64,000 bases of DNA from Klebsormidium nitens (GCA_000708835.1 DF236977.1:62001-126000), one strand, 5' to 3'; shown: positions 9,912 through 64,000, numbered from the stretch's first letter. The notes: generated by a model not told the origin, from the sequence alone. Program-made: numbers and translations.

Positions 9912-11357
9912 CTTGCCCTGTACTTGCGTAGATCAGAGGGTCTGCATTGGGACAAACAGTGGAAAACCTTGTAAAGAGCTCCTCTTCTACATCACTTACA
10001 ATAATTCTCACTGGACCCAATCAACTTGGGCAGCATCGAAAGGCTGTCTGAAGCCTAGGAATAATCCACTCTCTTTTCAAAGCTTCTCTCAGAGCTCATC
10101 CAACTGGACGCAGCTGAGTTAAGCATGCAGCACCACTAAAGTTGGGCAGTAGCACTGAGAGCTCCGGTTTCTGCAATTTGAACGGCCCTTCACGGTCAGG
10201 AAAGTAAGGCAAGGGCGTATGGTCTAATGTGCAAACATAAAGTGACCCTATGTTGATAGAGGTCCAGCTTTCATCATGGCAGCAAGAAAGCATATTGCAC
10301 CATAAGAGCTGAGCGCTGAAGTTGAGGCACTCTGCGACCGGGCTGCCCGCCCCTTTCCTTGTGAGCAGAGATAGTTGTATGCGTGGGCTTGGGACATGTG
10401 GATCTTTGAACATGTGCAGCTGTTCCAAAGCGCATCCAAACAATTACAGACTGCTGGTATGGTCAATTTTGAAAAAACCCGCTTACTCTGGGCCAGTATT
10501 GCGAGCCCGAAGGGCTGGAGCCTTGAGTAGAATCGTCCCCAGTATCTGTTAAAGTGCTCCCACGGACTCACTTGAGTAAGTGATGCACAAATGACTGCTT
10601 AGCTGGTTAGGAGGAGCTCAGTTGCTGCTGATGGGAGCCGCCAGAGACCTCAGACGATATTGCGCTAAGAGAAACTGTGAGATCTAAAGTCGTCAAATTG
10701 TCTTCCAAATTCAATGCGATCTGTCATGGGGCAGGGCCGAAATTCGAATGTGGAGCATCATGCATGGAAGGGAAGACTACTACATAGTACTGCTGGAAAA
10801 TTCAAGTTGCGAGTGCCTAGTAGTAGTGGCAGACAGTTTTCATCCGCCGTCTGAATGGAGACATGGCCTTGAAAGCGTCAATCGGACCGCTCACAAAGTG
10901 CATCAAATCAATCTGACGGTATAAACGTGCTCAACTCTTGACACAAACGACCAGCTCGTTTCAGCTCGTCTGCTCGAGGCAAATTAATTGAAAAGACTTT
11001 CCTCGAGAGCACACTGAGCAAAACTTACCAAAAGACAGTCTATCCTAAATTAATACAGGCCCCCTTTTGCCATTTTGAAGAAGAAGAAGCTGCTGCATTT
11101 AGCAATGCTGTAACTCGTCATTTTCGTCCACAGCTGCCCTTGAGCAGCCTGCCAGAGTCCGGTTGCAGGACGCACTTTGATGGTCTTGTTGAGTTAGTTA
11201 GATCTGGATTGAAGTCTCACCAATGTGGAATCGAGTGTAGAAAACACGGTGCTCTCTATAGTATAGAGAAGATATTGTTTGATTGTAATTCTGAACAAGG
11301 CGTACATTTCAATCTGCGGGCTTATTAAGCTTCACTTTGTCCTCTTAAAAGGAGAGC

Positions 11358-13314
11358 ATGGTCTTCTCCATTAAGTATGAAGTTTCGGAGAAGGACCGTA
11401 GCAAGGTGATCAGCGGCAGCTATGAGGTCAAGTCGGATGAAGATACCTTTAGAGGGCTCGCTGGTAAGCCGCCCTGTCGTTCTGTCTTGGGTGTTGCTCG
11501 GACCATGTGCATAAGTGACTGCTGCTTCTTTGGTTGTCTACATGCAGAAGCTTTTACAGTTTGTGGTGTAGCAAAACCGGGGGGAGCTGCAGTGGCATCT
11601 CACACCTAAAAGCCTTGAGTTGGCACGTTGAATAGCAACATAGAAATAACACTCAAATGGACCATAGAACGCCGTTCAAAGCGGACATCTAATCTGCACC
11701 TTCTTCGTTTGCGGGTAGAAATGAGTGTTGATTGTCAAAGCAGAGCTACTCAAAGAGGCGACTTTTCACTTCATTACCCATTGGTGCCAATGTTTTGCAG
11801 AGGCGGTGGCAGCCATTTACGAGCAATCGACCAATGAATCGGTTACATTCTCACAGCTCTACTTGGGGAAAAGTGGCGGAAAAGCTACAATGCATGAAGT
11901 TCCAGAAGAGACTCTTGATGGCAGTCTCACTTGTAAGTGTCGTCGAGACAGTAATGATCTTGTCCTGTTGCGTTTCTGCTCTTAATGCTGACTGTACGTT
12001 GTGGCTAGCATTGGTTCTCCTGAAGTCGATTAACCAATTGCTATTTTCTTCATGTCTATTCAGACGTATGCCAGTGTATCAGCTTATATCGATCAGGTTC
12101 TGTTGTGATGCTACTTTGCTATGCCCCGCAATTCACTGGCACTGCTTCGTCGACTACCTCATGCAGCGGGAACTGGGTAATCGAAACGGCAAGTCAATTG
12201 TTTGCAGATGACCTGATGTCCGACGTTGTTTGGGTTGTCGTCAAACGAAGCGAGGGAAGGTCAGGCATTGTTGCAGGCCACCTGGCTCCAAATAAAGCTG
12301 ACAAAGCGGTCTTTACTGTAAAGTACGAAGTGTCCAAGGCAGACCGCCAGGGTTTGATTGACGGAGTACACAAGGTGTACTCGGACGATGAAACATTCAA
12401 AGGGCTTGCTGGTAAGTTGGTAATCAAAGCTCCTCTCGCCCGTGTTTCAGTGACTTGGAAGCTTCCACGTTTTGTTCCGCTGCCCACGACATGTTCCGCT
12501 CTGCTGTGCGTGCAACCTGATCCTCTTCATATGACGTTATTTCTTGAGGCCGTTTCTCACGACCTGTCAAGGATGATTTCAAGCTTTGCAGATGCACATC
12601 GGAAGCGTAAGGGATGAAGACAGAGTGCCACCATCATCAAAGCCTTTTATTTGTTTGACTACTTCACTTTAGTTGCGAACCAAGTCCTTCTGAAAAGATC
12701 CGCTTCCTTCTGTAACCTGTAATCATTGCACGATTCGCTCCTCTCTTGATTTATGAAAGATGACAGCGACGTATCTTGTGCTGTGATGACAGACGCCTTG
12801 GTGGCAAAGTACCAGGAAGCCACCAATGAGCATGTCGACTTCTCCAAGCTGTACCTGGTGAAGAAAGGAGCAGCAGCTGCTAGTACGTTTGAGATCTCAA
12901 AAGAGTCTCTCAATGGGAGCCTTACTTGTAAGTATCCTCTTCTGTCCTGCTTATCAATCTCGACTTAGCTGTATGCTTGGCAACTCTCAGATGAGGTCTT
13001 GCATCAAGGGACCAACATTCTTTTCTGATAGATATTGCGAACCACTCAATTACACAAAAATGCGTGACCCCCTCTACCCAGATTCAAATTTCGTGTTTTC
13101 TGAGAGCATACCTAGTACACTTGCGTTTTTGACAAGAGAGAGCATCACACAAGGTAGTGATGGCTCCAAAGCAAAAGCACCCGTTTGGCCTGGTTTCAGA
13201 CGGGTTAGCTGATCTTTTGACGGTTCTGGCTGGGCGTTGACGACTTGAATTTTTTTTTACTATGCAGATGATTTGATGTCGGATGAGGTGTGGGTGGTTG
13301 TCAGAGCAGCTTAG
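11358..13314 (+). CDS. Uncharacterised protein of two tandem ~90-aa repeats, probably beta-grasp (ubiquitin-like/PB1/Crinkler-header-like) (5 exons, ~207 aa)
   Basis: Exons 11358-11463, 11801-11932, 12208-12411, 12793-12927, 13268-13314; all introns GT-AG phase 1; 624 nt open. Repeat 1 VFSIKYEV...TFRGLAEAVAAIY...SQLYLGK...GSLTYDLMSDVVWVVVK; repeat 2 VFTVKYEV...TFKGLADALVAKY...SKLYLVKK...GSLTYDLMSDEVWVVVR. The 5' end is uncertain because an acceptor-like sequence lies just upstream of the ATG. Confidence 0.8.
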
Positions 13315-55310: not shown

Positions 55311-58300
55311 ATGGCACTGAGCCACACTGTCTCATCGAACGCGGCAACGAGTGGTAGCCACCTGCAGAAAAGATCTGCCCATCGCTCTGCTTCCAGTGAT
55401 CTACCCCTGCAGAACTCTGTTGGCAGGTCGAGCTCGAGCCCCTTGGTGCAATCCACTGCTTTTGGATCCGTAAGATCTGGATCAGGACTGTCAAGGATCA
55501 GCGCGCATGCAGCTGTAAAGGAGATTAGGAGAGCAGGGGGGTCGAGTAGAAGGGTCAAAGGGACAAATGCAAGGGTGAGACAGCATTGGAAGGATCAGGC
55601 ACAGGAGTCCACTCATGTGTGCCCGCTCTGCCGAGCTGGATCAGGTGCCTGTAATGCCTATGGGACTTCAGCATGGGGCTTTGATTGCAGGAGTGCGTCA
55701 GTAGATCGCAGACAGTCTGCCCTGCGCTGTTCGCCTGACTCACCTAGCGATTCGGTTATAGAAGCGCCCCCACCTCGTAGTAGGCCAGAAGCCCCCACAT
55801 TACAGCCCCCTTTTGACACGTTCGACAACGTCCCTGCCTTCGACAGTCCTTTGCCGGAGACTCATGATGGTGTCTCGAGTTTTGACAGTCCTGGCCTGAC
55901 GCCTGATGCTCACATCCCCCCCTTTGAGGACACCGTTCGGTTGGGTCGAGTGGTTAATACGCCTGGCTTGGATGATCCAAGCTTAGCCCCTGACTATAAT
56001 ATCAAGGATGGCACTAATAGAGAAGGCACAGCTGAGGCTTCCCCTGCCGTCATTAAAGATCGCTTCAGCAGGGGTGTGGAGGAGCCTCTCCGCGCGGAAG
56101 ATGATATCAGCAGGGTTCCGGCGTCGCAAGCGGTGGCAGCAGCTAAGCCTGCGGTGCTGGAGTCACCGGTAGAAGAAGACCTTTTGGATCAGGGGGACTT
56201 ATGGGAGCAGGCCAAGAGGATCATGGCATTTGCAGGTACTATTCGTGACCCCTACGGTTTGATTCCCTCAACATAGAAGTGCTGGTATTACCTGCCTTAT
56301 TTGACCACAGCGGAGTGGTTGAAGAGGCTTGCATGCATCGATGTGACACTTTCTAGCAGAGGTTGGGCCCTACATGTGAAAGTGAGCCGGCCAAGGGATG
56401 AGGAGGAGGATGAATTTTAGAACTGCTGAGTTTGCCGTTTATCACTGCTATTGCTTCTTCGAGCTCCCCAGAAGGTGCCAGACTGTATCTTGATTTTCTC
56501 TGTGGCTATGCGCAGGCCCGGCACTTGGAATCTGGTTGGGTAATCCAACAATGAGTTTGGTAGATACGGCAGTCATTGGGACGGCAAGCTCCTTGGAACT
56601 CGCAGCGCTTGGTAAGCACCACCTTCTTCATGGCAGTCAGTGTTGTTGCCAGATTGCAGTCATCTGGTCGCAACGTCCGGCACAAATCGATCTGTGCTGG
56701 TTCGATTGTCATGCAATTTCTGACTGGTAGCTTAGCTGACTGATTGAACCTTGTTTCTCCTCTCAGGACCTGGGACGGCCCTCTCCGATGGGTTTGGTCA
56801 CCTCTTCATGTTTTTGTCGGTGGCCACGTCGAATCTGATTGCAACTTCGCTCGCCGAGAAGGTACGCAATGTTGCACAACATCCTTGAGCATGGCCATTG
56901 AAGAGACTTGATCGAATGTTACACTTGATGCAATCCTGCTCTTTGCCTTCAGGGGCCCACTAAAGCACATTGTTCCAGCTGTTTGCTGTATTCCTGGATG
57001 CGAGTCTGACCATAAAACTTTGTGCCTTTAACATCAAGTTTGGGTACTGAGCAATTGAACAGGCTCATCATGAGCCCCAACTCCGGCTTTGTACAGGAAA
57101 ATTTTGACATTCCGTACTCATCTGCTGCCTCCTATTCAATGCAGGAGGCAGTGTGTGGAGGCCGGGCAGTACTTTTCATTGCTTGTGGTCTGTAAAGTCT
57201 GACTGAAAGATTGGAGGGGAAAAGGCCTCTCCTTTGAGGGACAGTGTTCTCATTACCTTGTGTATCTTTCGGTTGCGCAGGATCCTGAGGGAGCTGCCCG
57301 ATCCTTATCTCGTGCGCTCTTCATTGCCCTGGTGTGTGGGTTTGGGATCACTGCCATTTGCGAGACGCTGCACACGCCCCTCCTCAAGGCGTTTGTGGGG
57401 AAGAATGTGGGCCTTATTCCCGCTGCCCGCGTCTATGTTCAGGTCAGCAAACGGAACACATGTTTCATTGTGGTCACCTTCCTCTCATTGCTAGTCATGT
57501 CTTTTAGAACATCTCAGTCGTTCTTCTCACCTTATTTGTTTCATGCATCGAATCAAGGTTTGCAGTGATTCTGAATGCCTGTACATTTGACTGTAGACCT
57601 GTGAAACTCACCTTTTCCTCTATTTTTTCCCCTTTTTTTTCCTTTACCTAAGCTGTACTTCCTCAGGAAGTGGTTGCTTTTGTAACCATGCTCCTCAAAA
57701 TTGGCATCACAATCCCCACCTCTCTGCAAGGCAACTGCCGTGTTGTACAGATCCATCAACAATCCTTCACCGTCGATGACCCCCCTGTTTGCAGATTCGC
57801 GGGCTTGCTTGGCCCGCTGTGTTGGTTACCATGGTGGCGCAGAGCGCGTGCCTGGGCATGCAGGACGCGTGGGGCCCTTTGCGGGTGCTCGTGGTTGCTG
57901 CGTCGATCAATTGCCTGGGGGACATCCTCCTGTGCAGCGTGTTGAAGATGGGGATTGCAGGGGCTGCGTGGGCCACAGCCGCCTCGCAGGTGAGTGGACC
58001 CCTTTTCTTGAGTGGTCTTCACTGGACTTCGCTCCCTGTATGAGCGTTGGAGCTACCTTTTCGAAATTGTGGAGTTCGCGACGAAAAGTGAAGCTGCCAA
58101 AACCCCTCTGGCGGCCTCGAATCTGTCGAATCTCGTCTGTGGTACTAGCAACGGGAAGTGGATAAATTGACCCCAATTGGTTGATTGGGCCGACAAGGTT
58201 CTGGTGGTGTCACTTTTGGCAACATTAGGTGGGGTGGACCTGAGATGTAATGCTTTTCGATTCCACAGTTTGTAGGAAGACTTATAGAACAACGAGTACT

Positions 58301-61300
58301 TTGATGATTGTTTCCTTAAGAAAAGCATGTGCGTATAAAGGGCCTGGGGTGAATCCTGACCCGATGCATAGAGCACTCTGAAGAAAGCAACGAGTGTGGT
58401 TTAGTCGTTTGTCAAGAAGCTGACTGCTCCTTCTGCAACTTCCATGAAAAGAACCGCCAGGTGGTTGAGTCTCCCACTCAGCTTCTTATGGTCAGCTCAA
58501 ACCCAGGCTCCTTTCTCTTGTGCAGATTGTTGGGTGCGTGTTGATGCTGCAGAGTTTGCGTAAGCGCAGCACTATTCCGCTGTACCTGTCAGTCCCTCGT
58601 TTTGCGGACCTGGTCACATTCATGTCCATTGCGGGGCCAACGCTAGTAACCATGTTCAGCAAGGTGAGCGGGCGCTGCTGTTATCGTTGGACATGTATTC
58701 GAATCAACAATTGCTTGTTAGCTTGGTAAATAGTTGCTCGGCCCCTTGTTGTTATCCTACTCCTATCAAGCTGAGGTTCAAAGGGTCGTGGTTAACGAGA
58801 GAATCATCATGCTCTGCAACCCAGCAATTAAGGAAAGTTCAGGTCTCAATACTCCATGAAGAAGCCGCTCTATTCCCCGACGATTGGTTTTAAGCGCCGT
58901 TTAAGACAATGGTACTGTTTGGAGTACGATTCGTCTTGGCTGTATCACAACTACGCATTCTGGCGTCATAGTTGGTGTTTCGTTTCAGACGGAAGTTTTG
59001 AGTGAAGTCTTATGCTATATTCTTGTATGCAGGTGTCGTTTTATACGTTGATGACATACGTTTGTACAGCTAACGGCACTGCCACGGGGGCAGGCCATCA
59101 GGTAAGACAATCTCGCTCTTCTTTGCACAGCATGTGGCCAAAGACCTTGCGCTTATCTCTCATCCTCCGAGTCGTTGACCTCCGTGTGTGACTGCCTCCT
59201 TTTCCTGCTCTTTGACCGTGGTCTTGCTGCCGACCCTCACCTTCATGATGCCTACTTTGACGCCTTCGATTGTGTAGGACGGAGCCTTGAGTAGGGGTAA
59301 GAACACTGACCGTCTCAAGCTTCCAAACTCCCTTTAAAATTTGTGCCGAGTGACAGTTTGGACGAGTAATTGGGACCTTCGTCAGAAGCTGCGCGGAACC
59401 GAACCCTCCAATAAGCGTCCCGCTTGCCCCCGCAGGTGATGATCGGACTTTACGCGTTCTTCGCCGTGTTTGGCGAGCCGCTGTGCCAGACGGCGCAGTC
59501 GTTCATCCCCGAGTTCATCCGCGGCGCTAACCGGTCGCTGCACAAGGCGCGCAAGCTGCTGCAGTCGCTCGTGCTCATGGGCGGCCTGCAGGGCCTGGTG
59601 CTAGGGGCGGGGGCGGGCCTCATGCCCTGGGTGCTGCCACAGCTCTTCTCCAACGACGCGGCCGTCATTGATCAGGTAAGCGTGTGATGACGGATTTGAA
59701 GGAATCTGCTGATTCTGAGTTGCGTCTCTGCTGATGGGTGGATTTGAAGGGATTTGAGTCGTAGTGCAGAGCTTTGATCGTAGTTTGCCGATTGTTTTTG
59801 AGTTCTGATGTCAACATATGAGAGCTCTCAAACGATAGAAAATACTCTATAATTAAGATCGCTGTCACATTCTCAACAATCTACATCGGATGGTTGTGCT
59901 ATATTCTTTCAAGTAAGAACCTTCAAAATACGGGTTAAAAGGAGGTTGACCAACGTTGCTGTCTTGCAAAGTGTGCCCCGGGACTCAGCGTGTTCAGATA
60001 GGATCCACTACAGTAGTGGCTGACATTCAATACAAACGATTGCACAGCATCTGCAGTTGTCATCTGCTTGCTGTATTCTGATTCGCGCTGTCTCGTACAG
60101 ATGCGTCGAGCGTCGTTCCAGATTTTTGCTGCTAACACTATCAGCGGGATGAATCTTTCGATGGAGGGCACGCTCTTGGTAAGCTGTTGCATCTCACGCG
60201 TTTTGCGTTCTTTGATCCACTACTAACCCGCCCACTAACCACGCGGTCACCCACCTTCTTTTGTGACCGCAGATGCGTCGCGTGTCTGTCCAGATATTCA
60301 TAGCAGTTGTGCTCACCCCTGTGAATCTGTCCATGGAAGGCACGCTGTTGGTAAGTGCTGCATGCAGGGGCTTAGTTACCGTTGTGAATTATGTCTTTCG
60401 TAGGGCGAGTCGTCAGTCTTACTAGAGAAGTCTTCAGGGATAGCGGTCCTTAGAAACATCACAACAACCAATTCCAAAGAGTAATGTAAGTCCGCCTTCA
60501 CAGGCAGCTTTGCAGCATGTTTCCTAGGGTCTCACAAGAAGAATAGGAAACAGAAAAGTAGCACCTCACGCAGATGACACTTCGTGTGCTGGCGTGGAGA
60601 GTAGGTTGCATATCAACATGTTTCATTCAGAAAGTTTCGGCGAACTCGACTGCAGTTTGTCAGGAGTGAGTGCTACCACAGGGGTCCTGATTGCTGTGAT
60701 CTCGGTTCCTGCAGGCTGGCCGAGATCTTGTTTACCTGGCGATCAGCATGGTCTGCAGTTTCTCCATCATGGCTAGCGCTTTGCTGGTAAGACGGATCTG
60801 TGACAAGCTAGACTTGGTGGCGTTGATGCCAGGGTTTTGCTGTCCTCAACTGGTTGCAATTGCTGTTGTACACGTCGGCAGCTCACATAGACAGCCTTCC
60901 GTTCAGCCGCTTCTGTTGACTTTATTCAGTATTTATTGTCTCTAAGAGCTGCTCTCAGCGCGACCGTTTGCCAGCCAGAAGTTTGTATCTTATGCGGTAA
61001 CGGGTCTGAGACGGTCTGAAATGGTTTCACATACTTGTACAGTTGCAGCGTTTCTTGCTCTGCTTCACTGGTATGGACGGAATGGATTAGTAGCCAGTCA
61101 ATTTGATATGGGCTTTGTGTAAATGACGGGTTTTAAAACTCAGGTGAGCTGTGGCCCTTAACACCTATGGCATTTTTGCAGGTGGGCAGCAAGAGGGGTA
61201 TTGGTTTGGGGGGCATCTGGTGGTGCCTGGTCGGATTCCAATCGGTAAGGCAACAATGGACGATTGGTGTACCTTCTCGGAAGGGGACACATTGGTTTGT

Positions 61301-61599
61301 CAGCCATAAGAGACATCCATGGCCGGGTAACTTTATACTGGAGACTCCTTAGCGTTCTTTCTGCTTCATACGTGCTATTGGTTGTTGACAGTGAAGACTG
61401 AGGGGTAAATTATGTAGATTGCCGTCCGGCAATGTGCAATTTCTCGCACCGCAGGCGGACTCAATGTTATCCTCGGTTCTGCTTGCAGATCCGCTTTGTG
61501 TCAGCATCAATGCGCCTTTCCAACCCAAAGAGCGTCGTTGGTGGTTTGAGGACAAGGAGAACGTCACCGGAGCCCATTCCGGTTGTTATGGGAAAGTGA
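55311..61599 (+). CDS. Plastid MATE efflux transporter, DTX46/EDS5 clade (~747 aa), with duplicated alternative exon 9
   Basis: Exons 55311-56235, 56516-56611, 56767-56861, 57281-57442, 57795-57989, 58526-58663, 59033-59101, 59436-59675, [60101-60178 or 60273-60350], 60715-60786, 61182-61244, 61489-61599. Motifs [51 protein letters not shown] and [10 protein letters not shown]. Confidence 0.93.
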
Positions 61600-63208: not shown

Positions 63209-64000
63209 TAGTAACCGGTAGTACAATATGTACCTGAAGTGTTGTTGTTTGCCATGCAGTTGAACTTGCAACATTATTATGGTATCGCGCGCCTCAGCCC
63301 CCAGACAGTAATTGATTTGCAGACATTATACCTCTAAATGTCAACTAGCTGAAGCAGGCGGAAGCGATCCGATGATCAACAGCCTCCATGTGTCCAGGCC
63401 AGCCTTATAAGCTGAGCTGTTAATCAGTGCATAATGTCACTAAATGTTATCGCATGATTGAGCTATGCACATGGTAGAGATGATATGTGCAGAAAACGAT
63501 TATAAGTACCACATGGGAGAGCGAATACACATGCTCGAGTGCACTGTAGATGATTGGCAGTTTGACAGGAATGCAAAGAAATATTACTGGCGTCAAACCT
63601 AATGTCAAACTCCGCTCCTGGTGTTGAAGGTGACTTCCGTTGTCATGCACCAGACACTAGGCTACTAGTCACCCGATAAGAGTCTATCTTAATTGGACCA
63701 CAAAACTGCAAGCTTCTGTACTTGTCCTAGTGCGTCTGTGTGATTTTACAAATCATCTGTCTACTTGACACTACCGCTATATGGGTCCCCATAAGAAGCA
63801 TAATGTTTCTCATATGAAACAAGAATTTCACTACAATTACTCTAGTCAACGTGCCAATTTCCTAGATCCGAAAAATATCAGTGGAGTGCTGAACGGTTTC
63901 CATCTATGCCAAAGCCAAGCTGCAAACGCAACACAAATGTCCCGTATGTAAAGTACCATGCGATTAGTTGAGCAACCTCACTGTAAAGCAATCTACACCG

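What the first reader, a model, noticed from the sequence alone, without database searches (positions are those of the whole stretch)
60101..60350. Tandem duplicated, probably mutually exclusive exons in an EDS5/DTX46-clade MATE transporter
Seen: exon 9A (60101-60178, [26 protein letters not shown]) and exon 9B (60273-60350, [26 protein letters not shown]) are both 78 nt and phase 0-0, each with cag and gtaag sites and homologous donor flanks. 17 of 26 residues are identical, yet 9 of those 17 codons differ synonymously, which points to purifying selection on both copies. Substitutions cluster in the helix just before the shared acidic EG. Established: MATEs have 12 TM helices with acidic cation/substrate-binding residues in the C-lobe; Arabidopsis EDS5 is a plastid-envelope exporter needed for salicylate synthesis; mutually exclusive splicing is rare in plants. 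Inference: including both exons would add an extra helix, so one gene likely makes two transporters with different TM10-region pockets. 9B resembles angiosperm sequences more (TP motif) and 9A looks like the derived variant, making this a splice-encoded substrate or coupling switch.
Basis: partly seen in the sequence, partly recalled or inferred. Interest (0 to 1): 0.85.

Follow-up and report, generated by a model that had tools for sequence, protein, structure and literature searches.

The report
Alternative TM10 exons in algal MATE transporter
A plastid-type MATE transporter gene of the alga Klebsormidium carries two tandem copies of the exon for its tenth membrane helix, and transcripts of a sister species use either one or the other, a kind of splicing seldom documented in the green lineage.

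Summary
Exons 9A (60101-60178) and 9B (60273-60350) are both 78 nt and phase 0-0, with cag/gtaag sites and 17 of 26 identical residues.

The window is Klebsormidium nitens. The gene is the EDS5/DTX46-like MATE GAQ79316.1, whose public model uses only 9B, so 9A is unannotated.

Three related genomic contigs keep both exons intact. Each exon is under purifying selection (dN/dS 0.10-0.17), and both have about half the synonymous divergence of the constitutive exons.

Three intron-free transcript contigs from a sister species splice exon 8 to 9A to exon 10 (two contigs) or exon 8 to 9B to exon 10 (one contig). Outside the swapped exon they are 99.3-99.7% identical. None has both exons or neither.

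AlphaFold models place the exon exactly on helix TM10. Including both would give 13 helices and including neither would give 11.

9B is the canonical form. 9A replaces the near-invariant Thr-Pro with Ser-Gly and a conserved Leu with Asn or Cys.

Chara, Closterium and Marchantia have one copy, so the duplication is lineage-specific.

The functional switch and the mechanism that enforces exclusivity remain untested, and no docking/selector RNA pairing was found.

The parts
55311..61599 (+). EDS5/DTX46-like MATE transporter gene of Klebsormidium nitens. It has 12 exon positions, with position 9 present twice, and gives 747 aa per single-exon isoform.
   Evidence: Gene model built from tblastn against homologues and GT-AG junctions. 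The MATE core is identical to GAQ79316.1 (P0086). It is colinear from residue 1 with the full-length transcript L004 of a sister species.
55311..56235 (+). Exon 1. It encodes a long Ser/Arg-rich N-terminal extension, presumed to be a plastid transit region, and the start of the MATE core.
   Evidence: The orthologous transcript protein P0206 starts MALCQT..., matching this ATG. The transit function is inference only.
56516..59101 (+). Exons 2-7: 56516-56611, 56767-56861, 57281-57442, 57795-57989, 58526-58663 and 59033-59101.
   Evidence: All junctions are GT-AG. The frame matches P0086.
59436..59675 (+). Exon 8, constitutive, 80 aa (TM8-TM9 region). It donates to either 9A or 9B.
   Evidence: phmmer with this exon found the relatives.
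59676..60100 (+). Intron 8 (425 nt). A conserved CTGAT branch-point-like motif lies about 20 nt upstream of the 9A acceptor.
   Evidence: Four-genome intron alignment.
60101..60178 (+). Exon 9A, the derived alternative copy of the TM10 exon. It is not in the public gene model.
   Evidence: Transcripts L003 and L005 of the sister species use the orthologous exon.
60179..60272 (+). Intron between 9A and 9B, 94 nt, the shortest in the gene. It has two conserved CTAAC motifs (60223-60227 and 60235-60239). A hairpin found only in the K. nitens clade, GCGGTCAC 60243-60250 with GTGACCGC 60263-60270, lies over the 9B polypyrimidine tract.
   Evidence: The hairpin is absent from L001 and L006 and is not significant against shuffles (z -1.4 and -1.9).
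60273..60350 (+). Exon 9B, the canonical copy of the TM10 exon. It is the one used in GAQ79316.1.
   Evidence: Transcript L004 of the sister species uses the orthologous exon.
60351..60714 (+). Intron 9B-10 (364 nt).
60715..60786 (+). Exon 10, constitutive. It encodes AGRDL... at the start of TM11.
61182..61599 (+). Exons 11 (61182-61244) and 12 (61489-61599, stop included).

Best explanation
A 172-bp unit holding the 78-nt exon for transmembrane helix 10 was duplicated in tandem in the Klebsormidium lineage. The gene is the EDS5/DTX46-type (presumably plastid-envelope) MATE transporter gene.

Shown:
- Both copies have been kept as functional coding exons.
- Mature mRNAs carry one or the other.
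- One gene therefore makes two 12-helix transporters that differ at 9 residues (K. nitens) in the N-terminal two thirds of TM10.
- 9B keeps the family's canonical helix, with the near-invariant Thr-Pro. 9A has Ser-Gly there plus Asn/Cys-Thr where the family has hydrophobic residues.

Inferred:
- The swap reshapes TM10, a C-lobe helix. It keeps the invariant Glu-Gly at its C-terminal end and so tunes substrate or ion handling.
- The choice is regulated, because different samples show different isoforms.
- Exclusivity is enforced mainly by exonic and near-exonic splicing signals read by trans-acting factors. Low synonymous divergence in both exons is consistent with this. It is possibly helped by the unusually short internal intron.
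- Exclusivity is not enforced by frame-shift/NMD or by a conserved docking/selector RNA duplex.
For: Identity and duplication:
- The two exons are as described.
- The window is K. nitens and the public model uses 9B only.

Conservation:
- Both exons with cag/gtaag sites are conserved without indels in L002, L001 and L006, while the introns carry indels.
- dN/dS between the window and L001 or L006 is 0.12-0.15 for 9A and 0.10-0.17 for 9B. Neutrality is rejected for each exon (p = 0.004-0.04).
- Synonymous divergence is 0.26-0.31 in 9A+9B against 0.555-0.565 in the other exons (p = 0.0005 and 0.005).

Transcripts:
- Intron-free contigs L003 and L005 join exon 8, 9A and exon 10. L004 joins exon 8, 9B and exon 10. 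All map at 98-100% to genomic contig L006, which has both exons in tandem.
- L003 and L004 differ by 6/896 and 2/752 nt outside the exon slot and by 28/78 nt within it.

Structure and ancestry:
- AlphaFold models of both isoforms (pLDDT 89.8 and 88.5) place the exon on the tenth long helix, which is intact in both. The fold is MATE.
- 9B scores 35-37 bits and 9A 14-15 bits against the segment profile of 57 homologues. Thr15 and Pro16 are present in 54 and 55 of the 57.
- Both copies share the Klebsormidium-specific residues Q7, I8, N18 and M21, and Chara, Closterium and Marchantia have a single copy.
Against: - Only three transcript contigs exist. They come from assembled community samples of a sister species, not from K. 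nitens itself.
- The 9A and 9B forms come from different samples, so co-occurrence in one organism is not shown.
- Minor isoforms with both exons or neither cannot be excluded. Both would stay in frame, so NMD cannot remove them.
- No mechanism for exclusivity was found. No complementary intronic pair is conserved in all four genomes. The internal intron of the species with transcript evidence is 124 nt, probably long enough to be spliced.
- No functional data exist for either isoform, and the substrate of the ancestral EDS5H/EDS5A type is unknown.
- Residue orientation in the pocket could not be read, because model coordinates are not exposed.
Confidence: 0.8

Rival explanations
1. 9A is a dead relic of an exon duplication, a pseudo-exon that is never spliced in, as the public annotation implies.
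For: GAQ79316.1 contains only 9B. 9A departs from near-invariant family positions.
Against: Two independent spliced contigs contain 9A in place of 9B. 9A has kept its frame, its splice sites and a dN/dS of 0.12-0.15 across lineages whose synonymous sites are about 55% diverged.
Confidence: 0.03
2. The two exons are independent cassette exons. All four combinations are made, and the single-inclusion contigs are simply the ones that happened to be assembled.
For: Both exons are 78 nt and phase 0-0, so including both or neither keeps the frame and escapes NMD. No exclusivity mechanism was found. Only three transcripts are available.
Against: All three contigs have exactly one copy, and the protein cluster holds no member with both or neither. 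The exon is exactly one transmembrane helix, so an 11- or 13-helix product would invert the topology of TM11-12 and should be non-functional. The internal intron is the shortest in the gene.
Confidence: 0.12
3. The choice is fixed per strain or population, with each using one exon constitutively, rather than regulated alternative splicing within one organism.
For: The 9A contigs and the 9B contig come from different samples. They differ at a few other positions, 8 in 1648 nt.
Against: Every genome examined keeps both exons and both sets of splice sites under purifying selection. That is not expected if one copy were permanently unused in a lineage. The genomic contig L006 matches both isoforms at 98-100%.
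Confidence: 0.1
4. Mutually exclusive splicing is real, but the two isoforms are functionally equivalent transporters. The pair would be kept for expression control or by drift and subfunctionalisation, not as a specificity switch.
For: The invariant motif EG.LL at the end of the helix is identical in both. AlphaFold predicts the same intact helix for both.
Against: 9A-specific residues are themselves conserved among species: F6, A10, T13, I14, S15, G16 and M17 are identical in all four genomes. They replace the near-invariant Thr-Pro and a conserved Leu of the family. This argues for selection on a distinct helix.
Confidence: 0.25

Closest known systems
Homologous mutually exclusive exon pairs made by tandem exon duplication in animal membrane transporters and channels. 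Examples from my own knowledge are the mitochondrial phosphate carrier SLC25A3 exons 3A/3B, insect ABCC/MRP exon clusters, and voltage-gated Na+/Ca2+ channel segment exons. The prediction criteria are those used in Kassiopeia/WebScipio (PMC3923563).
   Same: The exons are adjacent, of equal length, in the same phase and of clear sequence similarity. Each encodes the same structural element, here one transmembrane helix. Transcripts carry exactly one. Both copies are under purifying selection.
   Different: This case is in a streptophyte alga. In 2014 no internal homologous MXE was annotated or described for Arabidopsis (PMC3923563), and I found no report for Klebsormidium or for EDS5-type MATEs. 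The enforcing mechanism is unknown here.
Arabidopsis EDS5 (DTX47), EDS5H (DTX46) and Marchantia MpEDS5
   Same: They belong to the same MATE clade by best hits, at 49-54% identity over the exon 8-12 region. They share the 12-helix MATE fold. The 78-nt TM10 exon has the same boundaries in Marchantia (L012 5697-5774). The motif TP....EGTLLAGRD is conserved.
   Different: Land-plant, Chara and Closterium genes have a single TM10 exon or segment. In Brassicales diversification came from gene duplication (EDS5 versus EDS5H, PMC12305054), whereas here it comes from exon duplication plus splicing. The isochorismate/salicylate role is specific to Brassicales EDS5 and cannot be transferred.
Docking-site/selector-sequence MXE control (Dscam, 14-3-3 xi, ATE1; PMC6071210, PMC7797038)
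   Same: It is also a tandem array of homologous exons, of which one must be chosen.
   Different: No complementary intronic pair conserved across the four genomes was found. The only strong local stem, over the 9B acceptor, is restricted to the K. nitens clade and is not significant.
Steric-hindrance MXE (alpha-tropomyosin exons 2/3; my own knowledge)
   Same: The intron between the two alternative exons is very short, 93-124 nt against at least 155 nt for the others. Its branch-point-like CTAAC motifs are conserved.
   Different: The distance from the 5' splice site to the proximal CTAAC motif is about 56-57 nt in the K. nitens clade. It is 86 nt in the species where exclusive transcripts were seen. 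That is longer than the roughly 40-50 nt at which sterics are known to block splicing.

Membership tests
MATE (MOP superfamily) transporter | MatE domain (Pfam PF01554) | tested here: met
   Precomputed PF01554 hits on the orthologous transcript proteins P0087 and P0206. Single exons alone were too short to score.
MATE (MOP superfamily) transporter | Twelve transmembrane helices in two six-helix lobes, the MATE fold | tested here: met
   The AlphaFold model (pLDDT 89.8) has 12 long helices. Foldseek against PDB matches HvAACT1, hMATE1, PfMATE, NtMATE2 and AtDTX14 with TM-scores of 0.72-0.79. phmmer against PDB gives HvAACT1 at E = 2e-19.
EDS5/EDS5H (DTX46/47) clade | Closest relatives are EDS5/DTX46 proteins rather than other MATE clades | tested here: met
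   All best full-length hits are named DETOXIFICATION 46 chloroplastic, EDS5 or MpEDS5. No formal phylogeny with other DTX clades was built.
EDS5/EDS5H (DTX46/47) clade | Plastid envelope localisation | not testable with these tools
   Exon 1 encodes a long Ser/Arg-rich N-terminal extension. No targeting predictor was available.
EDS5/EDS5H (DTX46/47) clade | Export of isochorismate or salicylate | not testable with these tools
   According to PMC12305054 this activity is confined to Brassicales EDS5. Non-Brassicales homologues failed in reconstitution.
Homologous mutually exclusive exon cluster | Neighbouring exons of similar length, with the same phase and splice-site type and significant sequence similarity | tested here: met
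   Both are 78 nt and phase 0-0 with cag/gtaag sites. They share 65% aa identity, E = 7e-12.
Homologous mutually exclusive exon cluster | Mature transcripts contain exactly one exon of the cluster | tested here: met
   L003 and L005 carry 9A only and L004 carries 9B only. All three map to L006. The sample is three contigs from a sister species. The K. nitens public model has 9B only. Quantitative exclusivity was not tested.
Homologous mutually exclusive exon cluster | Both copies maintained by selection | tested here: met
   dN/dS is 0.10-0.17 for each exon and neutrality is rejected.
MXE enforced by frame-shift and NMD | Including both exons or neither shifts the reading frame | tested here: not met
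   78 nt is 26 codons. The both and neither constructs translate without extra stops, to 773 and 721 aa.
MXE enforced by competing RNA structures (docking/selector) | A conserved intronic element complementary to a site near each alternative exon | tested here: not met
   No inverted repeat is shared by the four genomes. The intron alignment shows conservation only at splice-site and branch-point motifs. RNAalifold finds little covariation. With only two divergent clades, power is limited.
MXE enforced by steric hindrance | The branch point of the downstream exon is too close to the 5' splice site of the upstream exon | tested here: inconclusive
   The proximal CTAAC motif starts at intron position 56-57 in the window and L002, and at position 86 in L001 and L006. 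The minimal spliceable distance in Klebsormidium is unknown.
MXE enforced by U2/U12 incompatibility | One intron of U12 type | tested here: not met
   All relevant sites are GT-AG with gtaag donors.

The most novel reading that the evidence does not exclude
The exon swap is a regulated, condition-dependent switch. It converts the ancestral, still uncharacterised EDS5H-type plastid exporter into a second transporter with a different substrate or ion-coupling profile. It does so by replacing the Thr-Pro kink and hydrophobic face of TM10 with a polar Asn/Cys-Thr...Ser-Gly helix. That would be an algal, splice-based counterpart of the EDS5/EDS5H gene duplication of Brassicales. It would be controlled by an exonic RNA code visible as suppressed synonymous change.
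Probability: 0.3. Interest if true: 0.75.

Novelty: new member of a known kind. Interest (0 to 1): 0.62.

Why it matters
Mutually exclusive splicing of homologous exons is a textbook way for animals to diversify channels and transporters. It is hardly documented in the green lineage. In 2014 none had been described for Arabidopsis (PMC3923563).

This is a clean case with transcript support and evolutionary constraint, in a streptophyte alga close to the ancestry of land plants. It lies in the clade that later gave rise to the salicylate-pathway transporter EDS5.

It adds a missing exon to the K. nitens annotation and probably corrects the N-terminus too.

It also offers a natural two-allele experiment on what TM10 does in EDS5-type MATEs. 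Their ancestral substrate is unknown.

It poses a mechanistic question as well. Exclusivity here cannot rely on NMD, and no docking/selector structure is evident.

Tried and rejected
- Pfam on single exons gave no hits because they are too short.
- Tandem Repeats Finder did not report the 172-nt period because the copies are too diverged.
- A junction-pattern scan of metagenome contigs for more spliced transcripts returned 60 loci. Only one was the gene, and it was L004 again. The rest were chance matches and were screened only by tblastn. None of these contigs was taken for human.
- A second protein search with the short 9A fragment P0204 found no further Klebsormidium transcript fragments.
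- RNAduplex on whole introns gave meaningless full-length duplexes and timed out, so it was abandoned.
- An inverted-repeat search and RNAalifold found no pairing conserved in all four genomes.
- The GCGGTCAC/GTGACCGC hairpin over the 9B acceptor occurs only in the K. nitens clade and is not significant. I rejected it as a general mechanism.
- RNAalifold paired CACTAACCA with the 9B donor TGGTAAGTG. I discounted this because branch-point and 5' splice-site consensus sequences are inherently near-complementary.
- Literature searches for this case (Klebsormidium + MXE, EDS5 + MXE, Klebsormidium + EDS5) and for the sample accessions found nothing relevant.
- tRNA and Rfam scans of the window were empty.

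Full report
**Observation.** Reading the window and translating it confirms the finding to the base. Window 60101-60178 encodes [26 protein letters not shown] and 60273-60350 encodes [26 protein letters not shown]. Each is 78 nt, preceded by cag and followed by gtaag. They share 52/78 nt and 17/26 residues, and 9 of the 17 identical codons differ synonymously. The exon ends are reported as direct repeats 172 nt apart. BLASTP of the two peptides gives E = 7e-12 for the single comparison.

**Gene and organism.** I used tblastn with homologues and GT-AG junctions to build a model on the + strand from 55311 to 61599. It has 12 exon positions. From intron 3 onward every intron is phase 0. A phmmer search with exon 8, followed by a cluster look-up, showed that the window is Klebsormidium nitens. 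The gene is GAQ79316.1, annotated as a MATE efflux family protein (P0086). P0086 is identical to my model over the MATE core, but it contains only exon 9B, so 9A is absent from the public annotation. The closest full-length relatives are named DETOXIFICATION 46 chloroplastic, EDS5 or MpEDS5, at 49-54% identity over the exon 8-12 region.

**Conservation in other genomes.** Three genomic contigs from relatives were retrieved: L002 (Logan SRR23617307), L001 (JGI 3300060285) and L006 (JGI 3300060284). Their exons are about 93% (L002) and about 80-85% (L001, L006) identical to the window. All three carry both exons with intact frames and cag/gtaag sites and no indels. The introns around them have many indels and little similarity.
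- Nei-Gojobori dN/dS between the window and L001 or L006 is 0.12-0.15 for 9A and 0.10-0.17 for 9B. The other exons range from 0.03 to 0.18.
- Neutrality is rejected for each exon separately (p = 0.004-0.04).
- Synonymous divergence of the two alternative exons is 0.26-0.31, about half that of the constitutive exons at 0.555-0.565 (p = 0.0005 and 0.005). This is a pattern typical of regulated alternative exons.
- Between the paralogues dS is saturated (1.5 or more), so the duplication is much older than the split of these species.

**Transcripts.** The 90% cluster around P0087 holds proteins from three short JGI contigs that have no introns.
- Mapped to genomic L006, L003 and L005 join exon 8 (ending at 10354) to 9A (10988-11065) to exon 10 (starting at 11729).
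- L004, which is full length at 731 aa, joins exon 8 to 9B (11190-11267) to exon 10.
- L003 and L004 differ at 6 of 896 nt upstream and 2 of 752 nt downstream, but at 28 of 78 nt in the exon slot. They are therefore isoforms of one gene with the exon swapped.
- No cluster member has both exons or neither.
- More transcripts could not be found.

This is direct though small (n = 3) evidence for mutually exclusive use. It comes from a sister species and from different samples. K. nitens itself contributes only the 9B-only public model.

**What the exon encodes.** AlphaFold models were made with a 59-60 sequence alignment for the 9B isoform core (pLDDT 89.8) and for the 9A isoform (pLDDT 88.5).
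- Both place the exon on the tenth of twelve long helices, residues 340-362 of the core. The helix is intact and confidently modelled in both.
- Foldseek confirms the MATE fold, with TM-scores of 0.72-0.79 to HvAACT1, hMATE1, PfMATE and others.
- Including both exons would therefore give 13 helices and skipping both would give 11. Either change would invert TM11-12.
- Both constructs stay in frame, so NMD cannot police them.

**Which copy is derived.** I built a profile from the same 26-residue segment of 57 homologues.
- 9B scores 35-37 bits and 9A scores 14-15 bits.
- 9A replaces Thr15-Pro16 (present in 54 and 55 of 57) with Ser-Gly. It replaces Leu/Ile/Met12 with Asn in the K. nitens clade or Cys in the L001/L006 clade. 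It replaces Val/Ile4 with Ala or Ser.
- The invariant Glu22-Gly23 and Leu25-Leu26 are kept in both.
- The 9A-specific residues F6, A10, T13, I14, S15, G16 and M17 are identical in all four genomes.
- Both copies share states unique to Klebsormidium (Q7, I8, N18, M21).
- The orthologues of Chara (intronless), Closterium and Marchantia have one copy. In Marchantia it is a 78-nt exon with the same boundaries.

The duplication therefore arose within the Klebsormidium lineage.

**How exclusivity is enforced.** This is unresolved.
- Frame-shift/NMD and U2/U12 incompatibility are excluded.
- No intronic complementary pair is conserved in the four genomes.
- A GC-rich hairpin over the 9B polypyrimidine tract exists only in the K. 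nitens clade and is not significant.
- The internal intron is the shortest of the gene, at 93-124 nt against at least 155 nt for the others. It has two conserved CTAAC motifs. The proximal motif starts 56-57 nt from the 9A donor in the K. nitens clade and 86 nt in the species that yielded the transcripts. Steric hindrance alone is therefore unlikely.
- My best guess, which is inference, is competition governed by exonic and splice-site-proximal signals and trans-acting factors. The suppressed synonymous change is consistent with this.

**Function.** The salicylate context needs updating. According to PMC12305054, the role of EDS5 in the isochorismate pathway arose within Brassicales. Non-Brassicales homologues failed in reconstitution. 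The function of the ancestral EDS5H type is unknown.

**Novelty.** Homologous mutually exclusive exons are a known kind of system. I found no report of this case or of any EDS5-type or Klebsormidium example. The Kassiopeia paper noted that no such genes had been described for Arabidopsis. I rate this a new member of a known kind, of moderate to high interest.

Noticed in passing
window 55311-55700 (exon 1 start): The public K. nitens protein GAQ79316.1 starts MQGSASVDRR... and is 623 aa. The full-length transcript of the sister species (P0206, 731 aa) starts MALCQT... and is colinear with an ATG at 55311 (MALSHTV...). That start gives 747 aa, so the annotated N-terminus is probably truncated or mis-spliced.
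   Followed up: partly
window 60768-60791 versus 60160-60183 and 60332-60355: The 3' end of constitutive exon 10 (..ATGGCTAGCGCTTTGCTGgtaag, MASALL) is 71% identical to the 3' ends of 9A and 9B (..ATGGAGGGCACGCTCTTGgtaag, MEGTLL). This may be chance or a trace of an older internal repeat of helix-coding exons.
   Followed up: no
window 60243-60250 and 60263-60270; L002 1422-1449: A perfect 8-bp GC-rich stem, GCGGTCAC/GTGACCGC, encloses the polypyrimidine tract just upstream of the 9B acceptor. It is found in K. nitens and L002 but not in L001 or L006. It could modulate 9B use in that clade.
   Followed up: partly
L010 2001-4904 (Chara braunii BFEA01000105.1): The Chara orthologue (GBG68787.1, 967 aa) is encoded by a single uninterrupted ORF. 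The Klebsormidium gene has 12 exon positions, and Marchantia shares at least the 78-nt TM10 exon (same boundaries). The Chara segment reads ..LLFSAVNIFLEGVLL and lacks the Thr-Pro, as 9A does.
   Followed up: no
L001 7500-10846 (- strand): A Ty3/gypsy-type retroelement (RVT_1, RNase H, integrase and a PHD-containing ORF) lies about 1.5 kb downstream of the MATE gene in the JGI 3300060285 contig. It is not seen at the corresponding place in the window.
   Followed up: no
window 63603-63999; L002 3937-4327; L006 15092-15706: The region downstream of the MATE gene is syntenic in the relatives (86% nt identity to L002). In L002 and L006 it is followed by an ankyrin-repeat gene.
   Followed up: no
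window exons 9A and 9B versus other exons: The first 8 nt and last roughly 18 nt of 9A and 9B are almost identical to each other, although synonymous divergence between the paralogues is saturated in the middle. This suggests nucleotide-level constraint or local gene conversion at the exon ends.
   Followed up: partly
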